From Ascidiella aspersa (lineage: Eukaryota), in assembly GCA_963924565.1 (NCBI GenBank), contig OZ004612.1, positions 15,872,001 to 15,936,000 on the forward strand: a stretch of DNA of 64,000 nucleotides, read 5' to 3'. Shown in pieces: positions 16,645 through 57,270 of the stretch. The notes beneath the pieces were generated by a model. The model was not told the origin of the DNA. It did no database searches and saw nothing but the letters and a program-made list of their open reading frames with translations. Every line of letters begins with the position of its first letter. The first letter of the stretch is position 1. Both the position numbers and the translations under genes were made by a program.

Positions 16645-16836
16645 CATCGTCAGTATATCTTAGATTTCATTCGAATTAAGATATACTGACGATGCCTTAG
16701 TTGGCGAAATATATATATATCTTTTTAAGATCTGGTTAATGTGTCTGACCTGAATTGCTAGCTTTGCTAGATTATTTTGCTGTTACTGATCAGGAATTAA
16801 GGTCGACATTTATCTTGCAAGGGTCAAGGTAATTTC
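16645..16836 (+). mobile_element. Penelope-like element pseudo-LTR fragment with 5' inverted segment
   Basis: Highly similar to the reverse complement of 54500-54673. 16645-16662 is the exact reverse complement of 16677-16694. Contains a minimal hammerhead. Confidence 0.7.
16678..16723 (+). ncRNA. minimal type I hammerhead ribozyme (PLE-type)
   Basis: AAGATATA-CTGACGA-T-GCC(TTAGTT)GGC-GAAA-TATA-TA-TATATCTT: 8-bp stem I, CUGANGA core, 3-bp stem II, GAAA, palindromic TATA in place of stem III, cleavage triplet AUA. Confidence 0.8.
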
Positions 16837-19800
16837 TATTATTCACATATTCAGTACAACATAGTACAGTAATAAAAGGGAAAATCATAAATCGAGAATA
16901 TATATTAGCATCGAAAAGGCATTAACTTTTTGAATTCAGTATTGTTAAGGGTCAGCCAACCAAACATTTTATAGTAAAAAGCTGACAGAAAATGCCTTAA
17001 TTGAATGTTTATAAATTCAAAATGTTATCGTCCAAAGTCAACCCCGCTTTTTATAGCACCACCCCCCTTTGGAAATGAGTTGCGCAAGGTCACGTACATG
17101 GATATTTGTTTAGGGTATCACATGGCGTCAAAGACATGTGACCGTAGAATATTTGTTTAATTTGTCCTAGTCAAGCGTTTTTATCAGCGTTGCTAAATAA
17201 CGTAAGAGTGTACAGTTATTTTCGGATTGATGATCGTAAAGTCATCTGAACAGATATAGTATTAATGAGTAACTACAGCCATAAAAAAGAAGTTCAAACG
17301 TCATTCAACCTGTTGACTCCTGACTTCCGCCGCCCGCACACAGAGTGCTATTGATTTGTTTTCGCGCCAGCACTTGCCTTACTCCAGTGGAAACAACGGG
17401 ACGAATAAGTGCAGTAGGAAAGGAATCGGTAAACAACTTTGGTAGGTGACAAAGGTTAAGAGAGAGAAAATTCCCAAGCGAACGCCTGGAGTCTCAAACC
17501 TAACTGAACTGTGGTTGTGTCGTCGGCAGAGCCCGTCAAATCGTACATTGTCCGCTGTGGGTTGCCACGATGGCACGATCAACATCTTCAGAACATCCGC
17601 CGGACCAACAGCGGGTCAACAAGGTGCCTAAAATCACATCCAGTGTGATCGTGCGACCCGGTCGTGCCATTGTGCATAGGGGATTTGGTTAACTCAGCTA
17701 CGTTCACACATTATGCGGAAAACGTGGCCTAGAATATCACTTTGGAATTGCCTTACATAAAAAATATATTTTTAGAACACGTTTCTTAATTTACATAACA
17801 TAATAAAAGTTCGTCACCGTTTTTACAGGCTCGGTAAATAGCAACAGATTTTTGAAAGCTGTTACTCAGCACACAGCCCAATTCACTCTCAAGTTTGTCG
17901 TTGATTCATACTTTAAGTCCTACACATAGAGCTGTTACTGTAGCCGTTTATTGGGAAGCACCTAATAAAAAAAAATATTACTCGGCGAATAGAGCTATTT
18001 TAGTGTCGCGATTAGGCGTTTTCTACTAAGAAGCTTTCATTACAGATTTTTAAAATTTTACCAAAACCACACGGCATTTATTTAGAGATTTAAATCTCCC
18101 TTTACTTTAAACCAGAACAACATTAAAATGTCGTACATTTAATGTGTTGACAGACTTACCATATGTACAGCAAGTGTAACCTTTTAATAAGTTACTATCT
18201 AAATTATACCTAAAGTGAAAACCGGACACATTTCGCAAAGGTCTAGTTTTTCGCATATTTTAAATTAAGGCCTCGTTTAATTCTAGGAAAAGTGTTATTT
18301 AGAAGATCGTTGTTATCTCGAGTTGTTTACGTAATCCTTGAGTTAGTGTGGCTTATGGTTAAATAAAATAAGTTTTCCATTTTAGGTAATACAATGTTTG
18401 TTAAACGTATTGTTTGAAATCATTTGGAAGCTGACTTGTGTTAAAGTGGCACTACTGATTGTCATGATCAAAACATGCAGTGTGACGCAATAAGCTTGGT
18501 AATGGCGAAATCTACTTATGTAGGGCGGCACAGATGCACTGTAGTCAAACAATAGGGTACTCGAAGGTCGCATTACGCTACTTAACTGTGGCCTTGCGCT
18601 TTTGTCGATTTACACTCTAATTTAAATTTAAAAATACACAATAGCACGACAGGTTTTCGTTCAAACTTGTTGATCGTAAAATTATAAGATAACGACGATT
18701 GAGCTCGTTCGTAGCAGCGTTTCCACAAAGCTTGTTTTTCAGGGTGCTGGCCTACTGAAGGGTGCTTGTCTGCTGTGCTGCGAGCATTAAACCCGGGAGA
18801 CTTTTATCTTATCGCTAAGTAAACATTACGTAACGTGTCTTGCGAAAGTTTGTCGAAAGAGATCAGCCAATCAAATTTGAATCTTTAAATATGGGAATTC
18901 TGATTTGAAAGCCGCTCGCCGCACGCGCATGTTGTTATGATTTAAAAATAAAGCTTTAACATCATATCAGTTGCGCATGTTAAGGTAAACAGGATTGCTC
19001 ATAAACATTTTTAAGACCAACACACTGAGTAACCCAACATTTATGCATATAATGTATTGACAAACTATATAAAAATTTGTTAGCACTTGCAAAACGAATG
19101 CTAATATAAGTGACGAGTGACACCGTGGCTCAAACATAGCTGTACATAAAATAATGTATCCCAATATTTTTTGGTCAATTTGGTTAATTGCAAACTCTGG
19201 CAAGCGCATATAAGCAATCGAAAAGCGTAATACTGATAAACAATTGCTGCCACCATAATAAGGCGCCAGTCACAACAATTGTTTTCCCGTTTTGCAGCTA
19301 AAAATACTCTGCTCGTAGCGCGAACTGTCGACGTCATGCCCATTTCCAGGCACATTACCTGGAACCTCGACAAAAAAAGTCGAATTTGTGACGGTCTGTT
19401 GACCACCCAGTAAAACGAGGATATAAATTTCAAAGAGCGCTGATCCCGATAAAGTTTATAGGGCAATGACTCAATCCTCTACTCCCGATCGGATATATAG
19501 GTGAAAAGCAACTTCTGGCCAATATACAAGACATAACCCGCCTTCGGTTTAGTGCATTACACATACTTAACTTTGGAGCATAATGTCTTATTTTGTGAAA
19601 GGGAACGTGTTTGTTGTCACAACAGGACTAGGCTTAATTCATACGGTGATTTTAACTTGTTCAGAACGTAATAAAGCACAGTACGGAGCTCACACTAAAT
19701 GTCTAACTATCTTAAATATATTCATATATGGCCTAGTCAACGGACGTTTTAACATAGATTATATTTAATATTTTTCGCAAAATGTAGCGGGCCTGTGCGC

Positions 19801-52410: not shown

Positions 52411-53261
52411 GCGTCTCCCTCCCACACCAGACAAAGTAAACATTTTGCTTTTTTGCGCAGTAACATTTGCTTTTGCGCACTTACATCATTCTCGAATTAA
52501 AACTAAAATATCTTCATTTTTTGTCACAACTATTTGAGCATTTCGCATTGGTCACTTTTTGTTGATGTTTTTAGCTAAAAGCAAGTAAACAAAAAAACAA
52601 ATTCGCATTGACAATTGTGACGTAATAAATTACTTTGTCTATTCGGTTTTCATCATACACGCTGTGTACGTTTTTTTATCTCACGTAGAACTAAATGTCA
52701 GGAAAATCAAGCTTAAAAAAAATGAGTTTAGAAGAGTACCGAACACAGCAGTAGACTGTTTGATAATTTTGGATCATGAAACCGAAATGCATTTTTTAAG
52801 ACGTAATTTTTTAACACCATTGCAGTTTTTACACTATTTCTGTGCAGATACATCTGTGGGGTCAATAATGGCCCTCACAAATTGACAAAATCATCTTTAT
52901 TATTACAAATGAGCAAATAGTTCGTGATTCTGGATTGTGCGTTAAAGGCATCACGCATCCTATTTTTAAAATTAGACATTTCGTCAATTTAACCCAAATA
53001 TTCGCACATTTTTTTTCCGACCGCTTTGTTGCCATATCCTTAAACATATTTAACTCGATTTCAGTTGCACATACAAGTTTATTGAAAATATTTGTTTCAT
53101 GACGTCACGCTTTTTTACGTCATCCTTAAAATTTACACGCCTCGCCCCTATACCAAAAAACATTGATATGCCGCGGGCCTCTGCTAACGCAGCCTTAAAA
53201 TATTCTTGCGCACTACAAAACATATTTGCGCAGTAGAAAATTTTCTTAGAGGGAACACTGC
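52410..53261. mobile_element. degenerate hAT-like element (CAGTGTTCCCTC type)
   Basis: Right terminus TAGAGGGAACACTG; TGCGCA subterminal repeats at both ends; left terminus decayed. Confidence 0.5.
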
Positions 53262-53599
53262 CTACGAGCCGGAGTAAAGCGGATTTTCTGAGGTTTTAAA
53301 ATTAAAACGGGTAACCTCTTTTTCAGATAATCACGTTTAAACAGATAATGCCACTCTTGCCAGAATACGATACAAAATTACAGTTGTTTGTTTCAGGATG
53401 CAGGAAAAGACCGTAAGGAACACCGAGTCAACGGCACCCTGTTTGCGATTCAATTGGAAGTATATACACAAATCTTCATCAGAAAAAAATTTTATACACA
53501 AAAAATATAAGAAAACAAACGAAAAATCACCACCAGCAACGCAGGTTTAGTGCCAGAAATAACGTGAACACAGTGATACATTTACAACTTGACATAAAC

Positions 53600-54213
53600 C
53601 ACCCCATCCGTCAGAAATCAGTGCAGTTCTAAGCAAAAAGGTCTACGACAATCAGTGCATTCAAAGGATCAAAAAGTCCGACTTTGAGGTCTTGGACAAT
53701 GCACTAATTTGCATTAACAAATGTGCATAAGAAGATTAAGTTTAACAATACTTGACCCAACCAAACCTAAACGCTAACCAGCGCCCTAACCCAAATAATG
53801 TGCGATAATTTAATACTTATAACGCTTCAGGTCCCAATACCTCAATTTGTGACGTAATAATCTTAAATACAATGGACGAGAAACCATCTTATGACCATCC
53901 GAGTTTGAGCCTTTTTCCCTAGAAATTTAAAGAATTATTAAAATAACGTACATTATTTGGGTTAGGATTCGGGTTAGCGTTAGGGTTTAGGTGGGTCAAG
54001 TGTTATCAATCCTATCTCATATTTTTTGTTATCTTTTCTGGACTTTTAATGAATATTTTTAATTTATCTTCGCCGGGAGTTTACCTAAAGGTCCAAATCA
54101 GTGCATTGCCAGGACCTCAAGGTCTAAAAGTCTTAGACTTTTCTGCCATTGGATGCCCTGATTGTCGTAGACCTTTTTGCTTAGAAATGCACTGATTTCT
54201 AACGGATCGGGTG
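53600..54213. mobile_element. foldback element with long TIRs and a 7-bp TSD
   Basis: CACCCCATCCGTCAGAAATCAGTGCA... versus ...TGCACTGATTTCTAACGGATCGGGTG. Arms pair over >100 bp and again over internal CCCTAA-like tracts. TSD CATAAAC on both sides. Confidence 0.9.
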
Positions 54214-54499
54214 CATAAACATAATACAATTACTCATACATAAAGTTTAATATTATGGCTAAAATTAATGTACTGCTATGGTTGGAAAAGGTTTAGTATT
54301 TATGATTTGTTTATATGAAATGCTTTATTCAATTTTGGTTAATTGTAACTTGAAAATTTCGTGTTGCTAAGCAGGGTTAAGGTTAATGAAGTAAAAAATG
54401 TTACTATGACTGTCTGCAATCAAATCAAGCAACTAAACCACATAACCAAATATGATGTCTATACTCGTTTGTATGTTGCACTGAATATGTGAATAATGG

Positions 54500-54769
54500 A
54501 AATCACCTTGACCCTTGCAAGATAAATGTCGGCCTTAATTCATCCTGATCAGTAACAGCAAAATACTCCAGCAAAGCTAGCAATTCAGGTCAGACACAAT
54601 AAACAGATCTTGAAAGATATATATATATTTCGCCAATCAAGGCATCGTCAGTATATCTTAATTCAAATGAATCATTCATTCGAATTATGAATTATATAAA
54701 TATCTTTTAAGATCTGTTTTTTGTGTCTGACCTGAATTGCTAGTTTTGCTAGAGTATTTTGCTGTTACT
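54500..54769. mobile_element. inverted pair of Penelope-like pseudo-LTR fragments
   Basis: 54500-54673 (minus) and ~54675-54769 (plus, hammerhead core deleted) both match 16665-16836. Confidence 0.75.
54614..54659 (-). ncRNA. minimal type I hammerhead ribozyme (PLE-type)
   Basis: Minus strand reads AAGATATA-CTGACGA-T-GCC(TTGATT)GGC-GAAA-TATA-TA-TATATCTT. Differs from the 16.7 kb copy only in loop II. Confidence 0.8.
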
Positions 54770-54818
54770 CATTTGTATTGTGTCTTGCACAGCATTTTTT
54801 TAAACAGCTCAATCTTCA

Positions 54819-54997
54819 TCATCTTGATTCTCCATCATGAGATAAATTATGTTGAGGTATTTTTGAAAGTGCATCATGTTCCAATAGTGGAAAAAGTTCT
54901 ATTTGATTTATTGCCTGTTGTTCAGGGTGAAGTTTTCTTTTAATGTTGTCTCGATAATTATTGCTTGTAGATACATCATCAGAAAGATGAATTTCAT
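54819..54997 (-). CDS. CCDC32: CCDC32 orthologue, last coding exon
   Basis: Acceptor ATTTTAG. Encodes DEIHLSDD...NIKRKLHPEQQAINQIELFPLLEHDALSK...GESR*; compare human KRWLQPDKVAVSTEEVQYLI (from memory). Confidence 0.85.
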
Positions 54998-55800
54998 CTA
55001 AAATATCAAATGTGACAAATAATTTCCCTCATTTTAGTTTTAATAAAATATAAAAAAACACAAAAGCAATACCAAAATTTAGTATTTCAGGTAGGCCATG
55101 CCAGTGCTCTTTAAACTGTTTTCCGTTGTATACCAATAACAACCTATTAAGAACTTTGTAAACCTAACATATAGCAAAGCACAAGAATTTAACAAAGTAA
55201 TAATGTAAGGGTTCAGGTTTTAGCTCACTCAGCACACAGCTGCATGACATACTAAAAAAATTATATACACTTTAATGATAAAAAATTCATATTTGCGGTA
55301 AAAATAGAATATGCGCATAGCCCACAGTTTGAGAATTAATGATGAGTTTTATGATCCCATTTGATGTCTTCGCAAAGTTTTTGAAAAGTCGAGTGTGTTT
55401 ATGTTCACAAAACCTAATATTTGAATAGTAACATTAAAGATATTTTGAAGACCACAGGATAATGTTTTGAAAGCTAAAGCTTCTTAATTATGCAATAAAT
55501 GTCTCATACTGAATGTTAGGTGCATAACTGTACAAAATCTACATTTGAAACCCTGCACTGCCTGGAGCAGCACAATTCATACTTTATTTGAGGCCACTGT
55601 CTACCTTTTTATTTAATCTGATGTTGTTAACTTCTATCTGCTGTTCTGCCAAAAAATATTATAGCCGTTTATAGATTCCTCACCTCTAATGAAGACCAGG
55701 CTGACAGAATCTTGCCAGCCGTGTGGTGACAATCATTTTGGCCCGAATACTTCAGTTTTATTGCTGCACCCCTAAAGTTAAATGCTGTGTTCGCCTAAGG

Positions 55801-56749
55801 CAGGGGTCAGCAATCTTTACCAAGTCGCAGGCCAAATCAAGCTCAGCCAGTCTTGGTATACATGCCATAGTACGCCTTTGGTCTGAATAAATTTCCTTAA
55901 AACAGAAACTAAATCAGCCATAAATTGTTTAAGCCTTAGGTGGAAAAGCATGGCCTGGTACCTCCACAATATGGTGTCTATGGTAATTGCTTTTTTAACT
56001 CATTATATGATTACATGCTAAATCAAAGTGAAACTCAACAATTCTGTGATCGAAATTAAGTACTTTTTAAATAAACATTCTATTTGCCTAATATTGGCTC
56101 TTCCCCAGTCAACAGAGGCTTCGCTCTTAAACTTTTTTTAGAATGGAACAACAAAATTGATTCCTGCCAATTGTAGTGTGTAATGTTCCTACATATTCGG
56201 CAATTCAAACATATGTGTTTAAATATTTCAAGAAAAAGCTGCAAGGTTATTTTTGAGCAATCTTATAAAAAAAGTTTGTTTTATAATCATTTTTTCTGGC
56301 TGATTTTTCGGCCGACATGGTTGCCAATTGGCCATCATTTTGCCATACTGGTGATTACTAAGGTGCACTTTGAACACCGGTTTTCAGGTATTATAAAGAA
56401 TTTTCTGCCCTAATTTCATTAAATCTTTATTAAGTTTCAGGTCAGTCTAACTATACTTCTGCAATTGGGACTATTGTGCACTACTAACATGGTACACCTA
56501 TGTAAGCTATGTTGCATGCACTGCTGCCAAAATCTCACAACCTTGAGTCTGTAGTCCCATATTTTTAGACAATAACCATTTGGTCAAACAGGGTTAAAGA
56601 ACAAAGTATAATATTTCTTCTTTAACAAGAAACTTTCAATATGCTAACTACTTTAGTGTATATTGAAAATTTATAAATAGCTGTATGAACCACTAAAAAT
56701 TGTCTTGTGGCCCACTTCTGAGCCATGACTCACAGTTTGGGAACAACTG
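55801..56749. mobile_element. degraded hAT fragments in a CCDC32 intron
   Basis: Left terminus CAGGGGTCAGCAA at 55801 and a right terminus CAGTTTGGGAACAACTG ending at 56749. These may belong to different elements; TSD is poor. Confidence 0.4.
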
Positions 56750-57021
56750 CCCTAGGACCTAGATTGAACCAGGTATCACTTAAGTGGGTATACGGTATAC
56801 CAGCTTAAATAGCGCTGCGCTACAACCATGAGATAATCAGGTTTAACTTTGTTAATAAAAGATTAATACATACCTATTGTTAAGTTGATGTTAAATATTT
56901 TAATGATGAATATGTAATGTGAAATTATATGTGAGTAAAATTTACAACTCACAAATTAATATAAAACCCACAAAGTAATACAAAACTATTTTTAAGACAT
57001 GCTAATCTTGTTTTTAAATAC

Positions 57022-57159
57022 CTTCAACTGGGAATAAGTGGTTGGTTTTTGTTGCTAGTCTTTCCTCAAACTGTACTTTTTTTCGTGATTGTAGTGAAGC
57101 GATCATACCCTGGGGGGTGACAGATGTTGACGTACTTTGAATATTTTGCAGTTTGCGTT
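57022..57159 (-). CDS. CCDC32: CCDC32 orthologue, middle coding exon (138 nt, phase 1-1)
   Basis: Acceptor ATACAG, donor GTATTT. Encodes ERKLQNIQSTSTSVTPQGMIASLQSRKKVQFEERL; compare human EKKLRRIKG...VTSKDMLRTL. Confidence 0.85.
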
Positions 57160-57270
57160 CTGTATGAATATTTATACTTAAAACGCATATACATACTTAA
57201 CATGCTACTACCCTACATTTATTAGCAAATCTTACATTATAAAAATGAAGCTACAAGCAACATCACTTAA

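What the first reader, a model, noticed from the sequence alone, without database searches (positions are those of the whole stretch)
54500..54819. Sense-oriented hammerhead ribozyme plus antisense arm in the putative CCDC32 3' UTR
Seen: a complete minimal hammerhead core (54659->54614) lies on the CCDC32 strand 160-205 nt after the stop codon. The first canonical AATAAA on that strand is further downstream (54324-54329). Between the stop and the ribozyme is an inverted copy of the same repeat that lacks the catalytic core but is complementary to the 3' strand of stem I and ~70 nt beyond. Known: Penelope-like elements carry minimal hammerheads with a palindromic stem III that cleave mainly as dimers, and a 3' UTR hammerhead lowers expression of rodent Clec2 mRNAs. 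Inference: the mRNA may carry a conditional self-cleavage site (predicted cut between 54622 and 54621) that is held off by a long hairpin, which is also a possible ADAR or Dicer substrate. It could equally be a neutral insertion.
Basis: partly seen in the sequence, partly recalled or inferred. Interest (0 to 1): 0.8.

Follow-up and report, generated by a model that had tools for sequence, protein, structure and literature searches.

The report
Penelope-type hammerhead retroelement in CCDC32 3'UTR
The hammerhead-ribozyme motif and its antisense arm are real and do sit in the transcribed 3' UTR of a CCDC32-like gene, but together they are one decayed copy of an abundant Penelope-type mini-retroelement, and nothing shows that it cuts or regulates the mRNA.

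Summary
Observation confirmed. A minimal type-I hammerhead motif lies at 54659→54614 on the minus strand. An 84-nt antisense arm (92% complementary) lies between it and the stop codon (TGA, 54823-54821) of a CCDC32-like gene.

Motif and arm are not separate features. They form one ~297-bp retroelement (54771→54475) flanked by a 7-bp target-site duplication. The family has at least 314 and up to about 1100 copies in this 308-Mb ascidian genome. Its layout is that of Penelope-like element (PLE) insertions: an inverted 5'-truncated copy, a tail at one end only, and variable 7-14-bp duplications. Its ribozyme matches that of an autonomous RT+GIY-YIG PLE in the same genome.

The sense copy begins with a 16-nt host spliced leader, so it was copied from trans-spliced RNA. 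This scan had already noted that on other DNA of this genome.

RNA contigs and stranded reads show the mRNA running into and beyond the element, so it does lie in the 3' UTR. There is no evidence of cleavage. The hairpin is favoured over the ribozyme fold by about 12 kcal/mol. Published single PLE hammerheads do not cut. The core decays at the same rate as the flanks.

Most likely a neutral insertion of a known kind.

The parts
54824..54997 (-). Last coding exon of the CCDC32-like gene. The acceptor AG is at 54999-54998 and the stop TGA at 54823-54821.
   Evidence: Translation. Pfam PF14989 positions 118-149/150, E 5.3e-5. The X2 RNA contig begins exactly at 54997.
57017..57196 (-). Open stretch holding an upstream CCDC32 exon.
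   Evidence: Pfam PF14989 positions 66-104/150, E 6.6e-5. RNA depth peaks in 56940-57136.
54772..54778 (-). Upstream copy of the target-site duplication, ATACAAA.
   Evidence: It overlaps the AATACA variant signal.
54689..54772 (-). Antisense arm: an inverted, internally shortened copy of the element. It pairs with 54631-54548.
   Evidence: the repeat finder: 84 nt, 92%. Present with variable inner end in most of the 27 aligned copies.
54674..54686 (-). Antisense copy of nt 1-13 of the SL-B spliced leader, followed by a single G (54673) at the palindrome centre.
   Evidence: SL-B defined.
54657..54672 (-). Sense 16-nt leader ATTCATTTGAATTAAG. This is host spliced leader SL-B with one CpG>TpG change. 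Its last 3 nt are part of helix I.
   Evidence: SL-B + GT occurs 2301 times in 429-bp tandem arrays. Exact SL-B or SL-A is fused to ATATACTGA in 59 and 23 copies.
54614..54659 (-). Minimal type-I hammerhead motif. Helix I 54659-54652 / 54621-54614; CUGACGA 54651-54645; extra U 54644; helix II 54643-54641 / 54634-54632; loop 54640-54635; GAA 54631-54629; palindrome AUAUAU 54628-54623; A17 54622.
   Evidence: Same design as the PLE-B and PLE-A hammerheads.
54548..54631 (-). Sense arm. It overlaps the 3' half of the hammerhead.
54475..54547 (-). One-sided 73-nt tail, ending ...CAGTGCAAC. There is no poly(A).
   Evidence: Shared by the copies at one end only. PLE-B has the same asymmetry.
54468..54474 (-). 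Downstream copy of the target-site duplication, ATACAAA.
54324..54329 (-). First canonical AATAAA after the stop. RNA continues beyond it.
   Evidence: Minus-strand RNA depth is 2-4 down to about 53200, and the X2 contig covers 54498-54214 joined to 53592-53234.
53593..54213 (.). A separate 621-bp element with terminal inverted repeats and a 7-bp duplication CATAAAC, also inside the long 3' UTR. It is absent from the alleles in runs X1-X3.
   Evidence: Joint 53592->54214 in three runs. Sequence.

Best explanation
The region 54771->54475 is one old copy of a short non-autonomous Penelope-like retroelement (a 'mini-PLE') that inserted 43 nt after the stop codon of a CCDC32-like gene.

Shown:
- The source RNA was about 210 nt: a 16-nt host spliced leader, then the hammerhead, a ~70-nt body and a ~73-nt tail.
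- The element inserted with a 7-bp target-site duplication.
- The mRNA is transcribed through the element.

Inferred:
- A PLE reverse transcriptase / GIY-YIG endonuclease supplied in trans copied the RNA from both nicked target strands.
- The two cDNAs met head to head. That produced the antisense arm, the SL-to-SL junction at 54686-54657 and the one-sided tail.
- The antisense copy later lost, or never had, its ribozyme core.
- In the mRNA, the 84-bp hairpin forms in preference to the ribozyme. A lone dimer-type hammerhead has nothing to dimerise with. The insertion is therefore functionally neutral, or at most mildly deleterious as a double-stranded segment.
For: Family and copy number.
- The 241-nt unit has 82 scored matches from 1107 first-look candidates in the genome.
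- An exact 17-mer spanning helix I and the core occurs 314 times, against 0 for the control.

Retroelement, not DNA transposon.
- About 23 of 27 copies have variable 7-14-bp duplications, and none has a poly(A) tail.
- The window copy has ATACAAA on both sides.

PLE architecture.
- Copies differ in where the inverted copy stops. Four carry a hammerhead on both strands, and some have almost no inverted part.
- Autonomous PLE-B has ORFs with RVT_1 and GIY-YIG. Its insertions are head-to-head pairs flanked by 10-bp duplications.
- In PLE-B the inverted copy ends about 100 nt after CUGA and the direct copy about 185 nt after. The element shows 103 and 176.
- The literature gives exactly these PLE hallmarks (PMC8557442) and a mechanism: both strands are nicked and extended, with two reverse-transcription start sites (PMC11167929).

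Ribozyme homology.
- PLE-B reads ACAAA CUGAUGA U GCC AUUUAUA GGC GAAA UGCA UA|UUUGU.
- It shares the core, the extra U and helix II with the element, while helix I covaries and helix III keeps its palindrome.

Spliced leader.
- establish the two leaders and their fusion to the element.

Neutrality.
- 18 of 27 copies keep the motif, and the core is no better conserved than the arm.

Transcript.
- X2 contigs cover 54997-54734 at depth 39.8 and 54498-54214 joined to 53592-53234 at depth 31.8, against 0-5 in introns.
- X4 stranded depth is 3.9, 2.7, 2.1 and 3.8 along the minus strand.

Energetics.
- The minimum-energy fold is -160.5 kcal/mol, against -148.6 with hammerhead helices I and II forced.
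Against: - No cleavage assay or end-mapping was possible. RNA depth was about 3 in the raw-read run, and the other RNA evidence is from assembled contigs, which cannot show ends.
- A poly(A)-selected library would hide cleaved molecules.
- The autonomous partner is only inferred. PLE-B is about 60% similar over the shared 180 nt, and no full-length element with this exact hammerhead was found.
- The window copy's hammerhead is fully intact despite 11-20% divergence from its relatives. I estimate this has a chance of about one in six, so it is not evidence either way.
- Rfam models do not recognise the motif.
Confidence: 0.87

Rival explanations
1. Conditional 3'-UTR ribozyme. The hammerhead cuts CCDC32 mRNA when the antisense arm is displaced or when two transcripts dimerise, lowering expression.
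For: - The motif is complete and sense-oriented in a transcribed 3' UTR.
- The hairpin masks it by about 12 kcal/mol, which could in principle act as a switch.
- A precedent for a 3'-UTR hammerhead exists in rodent Clec2. That is from my own knowledge and was not checked here.
Against: - The arm-plus-ribozyme layout is the family's default, not a local invention.
- A single PLE min-hammerhead (from Schistosoma mansoni) showed no detectable cleavage, and dimers were weak (PMC4209133).
- No RNA-seq ends were found at a PLE hammerhead site in Anolis (PMC11167929).
- CCDC32 mRNA is low in abundance (depth about 4 in 1.2 Gb read), so trans-dimerisation is unlikely.
- Depth is similar on both sides of the element.
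- There is no excess conservation of the core.
Confidence: 0.04
2. Exapted double-stranded RNA element. The ribozyme is irrelevant, but the 84-bp hairpin in the 3' UTR is processed by Dicer, edited by ADAR, or bound by dsRNA-binding proteins, and so affects the mRNA.
For: - The hairpin is very stable: -128 kcal/mol, z = -20.
- It is transcribed.
- Rfam miRNA-precursor models align to it, but far below their thresholds, for example 47.7 against 139 bits.
Against: - No listed RNA-specific A>G or T>C differences fall in 54548-54772. The T>C and A>G counts in the RNA run resemble those of the DNA runs, though depth was too low to be decisive.
- Hundreds of other copies make the same hairpin, so nothing is specific to this gene.
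Confidence: 0.07
3. DNA-transposon MITE or foldback element with long terminal inverted repeats. The hammerhead-like string is then a coincidence in its loop.
For: Long inverted arms and a small total size.
Against: - Duplications vary from 7 to 14 bp.
- One end carries a 73-nt tail with no inverted partner.
- The inner ends of the arms differ from copy to copy.
- Some copies lack the inverted part and start exactly at nt 1 of the spliced leader.
- The hammerhead is homologous to that of an RT-encoding PLE.
- Descriptor hits in simulated sequence: 0 of 200 windows.
Confidence: 0.01

Closest known systems
Minimal hammerheads of metazoan Penelope-like elements (Cervera & De la Pena 2014, PMC4209133)
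   Same: - Type-I layout with core boxes CUGANGA and GAAA.
- One unpaired nucleotide between A9 and G10.1, and a G10.1-C11.1 pair.
- A very short palindromic helix III, implying action as a dimer.
- Hundreds to thousands of mostly solitary copies.
- Pairs on opposite strands 100-700 bp apart.
   Different: - Helix II is only 3 bp, against 7-8 bp in the Schistosoma families described there.
- Helix I is long (8 bp), and its outer 3 bp come from the host spliced leader.
Penelope-like element insertion architecture (Craig et al. 2021, PMC8557442; PAc biochemistry, PMC11167929)
   Same: - 5'-truncated copies with an adjacent inverted 5'-truncated copy.
- An extension ('tail') at one end only.
- Duplications of variable length.
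- The hammerhead sits in the terminal repeat.
   Different: - The element has no ORF and is about 300 bp in all.
- The tail is about 73-80 nt rather than 30-40.
- The RNA 5' end is set by SL trans-splicing.
Animal non-LTR retrozymes (Cervera & De la Pena 2020, PMC7229834; Li et al. 2026 preprint, 10.64898/2026.07.22.740005)
   Same: Short non-autonomous hammerhead-bearing elements derived from the terminal repeats of PLEs.
   Different: - Retrozymes are defined by tandem head-to-tail units giving circular RNAs of 170-400 nt.
- This family is dispersed as single or head-to-head copies with duplications.
- No tandem array was seen among the copies examined.
Discontinuous 3'-UTR hammerhead of rodent Clec2 genes (from my own knowledge; not read here)
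   Same: A hammerhead in the sense strand of a 3' UTR.
   Different: - As I recall, the Clec2 ribozyme is split into two distant segments, is conserved between orthologues, and was shown to cleave and lower expression.
- Here the motif is contiguous, derives from a transposable element, is of the weakly active dimer type, and is untested.

Membership tests
PLE-type minimal hammerhead (min-HHR) | Core boxes CUGANGA and GAAA, with helix II between them | tested here: met
   CUGACGA 54651-54645, GCC/GGC helix II, GAAA 54631-54628.
PLE-type minimal hammerhead (min-HHR) | [quoted passage not shown] | tested here: met
   U 54644; G 54643 pairs with C 54632. The criterion is quoted from PMC4209133. 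PLE-B has the same and PLE-A has an A.
PLE-type minimal hammerhead (min-HHR) | Palindromic positions 15.2-16.2 / loop 3, and an NUH cleavage triplet | tested here: met
   AUAUAU 54628-54623, then A17 54622. PLE-B has AUGCAU and PLE-A has AGCU.
PLE-type minimal hammerhead (min-HHR) | Helix I complementarity that covaries between families | tested here: met
   8 bp here, 5 bp in PLE-B and 6 bp in PLE-A, with different sequences. Only three families were compared.
PLE-type minimal hammerhead (min-HHR) | Self-cleavage | not testable with these tools
   No end-mapping was possible (depth too low, and contigs show no ends). Published single motifs are inactive.
Rfam Hammerhead_1 (RF00163) | Score at or above the family threshold | tested here: not met
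   No hammerhead hit at E<=10 on 281 nt and none in the genome scan (only 74 of 39749 candidates were scored). The model represents canonical type-I motifs with loop-loop contacts.
Penelope-like element (non-autonomous derivative) | Variable duplications, an inverted 5'-truncated partner, and a tail at one end only | tested here: met
   Criteria from PMC8557442.
Penelope-like element (non-autonomous derivative) | RT plus GIY-YIG ORF in the element itself | tested here: not met
   The element is 297 bp with no ORF. Such ORFs exist elsewhere in the genome in PLE-A and PLE-B. Hence 'non-autonomous derivative' rather than a PLE proper.
Animal non-LTR retrozyme | Tandem head-to-tail units allowing unit-length excision and circular RNA | tested here: not met
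   The copies examined are solitary or head-to-head. Circular RNA was not testable.
MITE (DNA transposon) | Fixed-length duplication and symmetrical terminal inverted repeats | tested here: not met
   7-14-bp duplications, an asymmetric tail, and copies without an inverted arm.
Regulatory 3'-UTR hammerhead (Clec2-like) | Conservation in orthologous 3' UTRs and demonstrated cleavage | not testable with these tools
   No related genomes were available. The insertion is present in the two other samples whose contigs span its junctions.

The most novel reading that the evidence does not exclude
This particular copy has been co-opted. The antisense arm holds a still-intact dimer-type hammerhead off, and unwinding or editing of the hairpin, or pairing with another copy-bearing RNA, releases self-cleavage of CCDC32 mRNA at 54622/54621. 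That would be a transposon-derived conditional ribozyme in a chordate 3' UTR.
Probability: 0.04. Interest if true: 0.75.

Novelty: new member of a known kind. Interest (0 to 1): 0.3.

Why it matters
For the gene itself it matters little. A CCDC32-like mRNA carries two transposon insertions in a 3' UTR of about 1.6 kb in this assembly, and nothing suggests that either one regulates it.

The family is of some interest to people who study transposons and ribozymes.
- It shows the whole Penelope insertion architecture in miniature: two cDNAs meeting head to head, and a tail at one end only.
- Its copies begin with either of two host spliced leaders. The template was therefore a capped, trans-spliced, uncleaved RNA.
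- That argues that hammerhead cleavage is not what defines the 5' end of the transposition intermediate here.
- The scan had already noted the spliced-leader point elsewhere in this genome.

Tried and rejected
- Rfam scans of 9 kb and of 281 nt gave no hammerhead. They gave only sub-threshold miRNA-precursor hits that reflect the hairpin.
- RF00163 over the whole genome gave nothing, but only 74 of 39749 candidates were scored.
- The MITE / foldback DNA-transposon reading was rejected on the duplications, the asymmetric tail and the spliced-leader starts.
- The retrozyme (tandem, circular RNA) reading was rejected because no tandem arrangement was seen.
- PLE-A as the partner was rejected. Its hammerhead and flanks are unrelated in sequence.
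- PLE-B is only a distant relative, with a collinear but weak alignment. No full-length element with this exact hammerhead was found.
- A pattern for the SL RNA gene using the Ciona Sm-site spacing found nothing. The leader plus GT found the arrays.
- A search for excess conservation of the catalytic core among copies found none.
- RNA evidence for cleavage or editing was unobtainable. The single read-laying run gave depth of about 3 in the raw-read run.
- The poly(A) site could not be placed. RNA runs to about 53200, where further polymorphic indels confuse the picture.
- Literature searches for spliced-leader-bearing PLEs found nothing relevant in the held library.

Full report
**1. What is in the sequence**

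Read on the minus strand, 54659→54614 is AAGAUAUA-CUGACGA-U-GCC-UUGAUU-GGC-GAA-AUAUAU-A-UAUAUCUU.
- It has an 8-bp helix I, both hammerhead core boxes, and a 3-bp helix II with a G10.1-C11.1 pair.
- It has one unpaired U between A9 and G10.1, a self-complementary AUAUAU in place of helix III, and an AUA triplet before the predicted cut at 54622/54621.
- I wrote a descriptor requiring all of these features. It hits two places in the window, this one and another copy of the same repeat at 16686(+). It hits none in 200 composition-matched simulated windows.
- Rfam does not report a hammerhead at E<=10 on a 281-nt slice, or in a partial scan of the genome. Its only hits are sub-threshold miRNA-precursor models that respond to the hairpin.
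- The inverted repeat is real. The arms are 54548-54631 and 54689-54772, 84 nt, 92% complementary, with 57 nt between them. The fold is -128 kcal/mol, z = -20.

**2. The gene and the transcript**

- The frame ending in TGA at 54823-54821 matches the C-terminal end of Pfam CCDC32, positions 118-149 of 150, E 5e-5.
- An upstream open stretch at 57196-57017 matches positions 66-104, E 7e-5. The two hits are collinear on the minus strand.
Depth is 3.9 over the last exon and 2.7 over the ribozyme and arm. It is 2.1 over 53394-53590, 3.8 over 53197-53393, and about 0.1 below 53197.
- Run X2 has no recorded kind but behaves as RNA. Exon contigs have depth 25-40 and introns 0-5. One 432-nt contig begins exactly at the splice acceptor (54997), crosses the stop and stops at 54734, 38 nt inside the element.
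- Another X2 contig, at depth 31.8, leaves the element's tail (54498) and runs to 53234.
- Transcripts therefore do not end at the AATACA variant (54779-54774). They also continue past the first AATAAA (54329-54324). The element lies inside a long 3' UTR.
- The poly(A) site could not be placed.

**3. Arm and ribozyme are one mobile element**

- The 241-nt unit has 82 scored matches from 1107 first-look candidates in the 308-Mb genome.
- An exact 17-mer spanning helix I and the core occurs 314 times, with 0 in the control.
- Similarity between the window and other copies runs from 54772 to about 54473.
- An alignment of 27 copies shows a constant sense part: leader, hammerhead, ~70-nt body and ~73-nt tail ending CAGTGCAAC.
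- It is preceded by an antisense copy whose outer end is nearly fixed, at the body/tail boundary, and whose inner end differs in almost every copy.
- Four copies carry the hammerhead on both strands. Others have only 27-50 nt of antisense copy, or none.
- About 23 of 27 copies are flanked by direct duplications of 7-14 bp, and none has a poly(A) tail.
- The window copy has ATACAAA at 54778-54772 and at 54474-54468.
- These features exclude a DNA-transposon MITE and point to target-primed reverse transcription.

**4. It is Penelope-type**

- A GIY-YIG scan of the genome found two repeated families with RVT_1 and GIY-YIG ORFs.
- PLE-A carries UUUGAC-CUGAUGA-A-GCAC-GGUU-GUGC-GAA-AGCU-U-GUCGAG.
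- PLE-B carries ACAAA-CUGAUGA-U-GCC-AUUUAUA-GGC-GAA-AUGCAU-A-UUUGU.
- PLE-B shares the core, the extra U and helix II with the window element. Helix I differs on both strands while staying complementary, and helix III changes from AUGCAU to AUAUAU while staying palindromic.
- The two sequences align collinearly, though weakly, from just upstream of helix I to their 3' ends. That stretch is 176 nt in the element and about 185 nt in PLE-B.
- Solitary PLE-B insertions are head-to-head pairs flanked by 10-bp duplications. The inverted copy ends about 100 nt after CUGA and the direct copy about 185 nt after. The small element has the same asymmetry, 103 and 176 nt.
- The literature lists exactly these hallmarks for PLEs: an inverted 5'-truncated copy and a tail at one end only (PMC8557442).
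- Biochemistry on an Anolis PLE shows that both target strands are nicked and extended, and that two reverse-transcription start sites account for the tail (PMC11167929).
- Cervera and De la Pena list four features for metazoan PLE min-hammerheads: the nucleotide between 9 and 10.1, G10.1-C11.1, the palindromic 15.2-16.2, and families with covariation (PMC4209133). All four are met here.

**5. The 5' end is a host spliced leader**

Earlier notes of this scan on other DNA of the same genome (s1-806516 and s1-790903) said that such elements start with the ascidian spliced leader. I tested that here.
- The published 16-nt Ciona leader (PMC7986045) followed by GT occurs 354 times in this genome, mostly in 584-bp tandem arrays.
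- One unit of that array shows the leader, a GTAAGT donor, a hairpin and a U-run. I call this leader SL-A.
- The commoner leader of the element, ATTCATTCGAATTAAG, followed by GT occurs 2301 times, mostly in 429-bp arrays. A GTAAGC donor follows it.
- I take this to be a second SL RNA gene family, SL-B. No RNA evidence for it was obtainable.
- Exact SL-A or exact SL-B is joined to ATATACTGA in 23 and 59 copies respectively.
- Copies without an antisense part begin at nt 1 of the leader. Full antisense copies end at its complement.
- The tail ends of both leaders are also found fused to the PLE-B hammerhead, at 8 sites with 0 in the control. In PLE-B a good acceptor (…TTTGTACAG|ACAAACUGAUGA) sits at that point.
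- In the window, 54672-54657 is SL-B with one CpG>TpG change. 54686-54674 is the complement of SL-B nt 1-13, and a single G (54673) lies between them.
- The small apical hairpin in the fold is thus two leader copies abutting head to head.
- The last three leader bases (AAG) form the outer pairs of helix I.
- Because every copy keeps the whole hammerhead behind the leader, the template was uncleaved RNA. This agrees with the Anolis result.

**6. Does it act on the mRNA?**

- From stop codon to past the element, the minimum-energy fold is -160.5 kcal/mol with the long hairpin. Forcing hammerhead helices I and II gives -148.6. At equilibrium the ribozyme fold is therefore negligible.
- Helix III cannot form in a monomer, because it would be 2 bp with a 2-nt loop.
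- In vitro, a single PLE min-hammerhead from Schistosoma mansoni showed no detectable cleavage, and dimers and trimers cut weakly.
- CCDC32 mRNA is rare in the RNA run, so pairing between two molecules is improbable.
- Transcript depth is similar upstream and downstream of the element.
- Among copies, core positions match the majority base in 95.6% of cases, against 93.9% for the adjacent arm. 18 of 27 copies keep the motif. That is neutral decay.
- The window copy is 80-89% identical to its relatives. Keeping about 37 constrained bases intact at that age is unremarkable.
- No RNA-specific differences were listed in the hairpin, but depth was too low to exclude editing.

**7. Verdict**

The antisense arm is part of the standard architecture of a known class of element, and the conditional-ribozyme idea has no support. 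The best reading is a neutral, moderately old insertion of a spliced-leader-capped mini-PLE (confidence 0.87).

No full-length consensus or ancestral sequence of any element was built. There were no referred steps.

Noticed in passing
window 53593-54213: A 621-bp element with ~55-bp terminal inverted repeats and a 7-bp duplication CATAAAC. Contigs of runs X1, X2 and X3 join 53592 directly to 54214, so it is an insertion polymorphism inside the same 3' UTR. Its internal inverted repeat (53743-53818 / 53933-54006) matches other loci (L015, L019).
   Followed up: partly
G000:C7:14.76-14.82 Mb (L074) and G000:C3:5.2-5.45 Mb (L075): Two tandem-array families of putative SL RNA genes. The Ciona-type leader is in 584-bp units (354 leader+GT sites). 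A second 16-nt leader, ATTCATTCGAATTAAG, is in 429-bp units (2301 sites). Use of the second as a spliced leader is inferred only from retro-copies.
   Followed up: partly
L047 (G000:C2:30626000-30635999): A tandem array of 3422-bp PLE-B units with open 748-aa (weak RVT_1) and 293-aa (GIY-YIG) frames. The units are 99% identical to the copies in L048 and L049, so the family may be recently active.
   Followed up: partly
8 genome sites, e.g. G000:C2:18289926, G000:C4:18957852: The 3' ends of both leaders are fused directly to the PLE-B hammerhead (…GAAT(T)AAG|ACAAACTGATGATGCC). The autonomous family's RNA therefore also appears to be trans-spliced just upstream of helix I and then retro-copied.
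   Followed up: no
window 16646-16870 (+): A second copy of the same mini-PLE family, with an intact hammerhead motif, an SL-B leader, and only a ~20-nt antisense fragment upstream.
   Followed up: partly
window 53045-53260: DNA contigs of X1 and X3 skip 147-157 bp here (53045->53193, 53079->53237). These are further indel or transposon polymorphism near the probable 3' end of the transcript. An AATAAA lies at about 53083-53078 on the minus strand.
   Followed up: no
window 55758-56545: Minus-strand RNA depth of 1.6-3.5 inside what should be an intron of the CCDC32-like gene. No Pfam match for the open stretches there. This could be a retained intron, an unrecognised exon or transposon-derived reads.
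   Followed up: no
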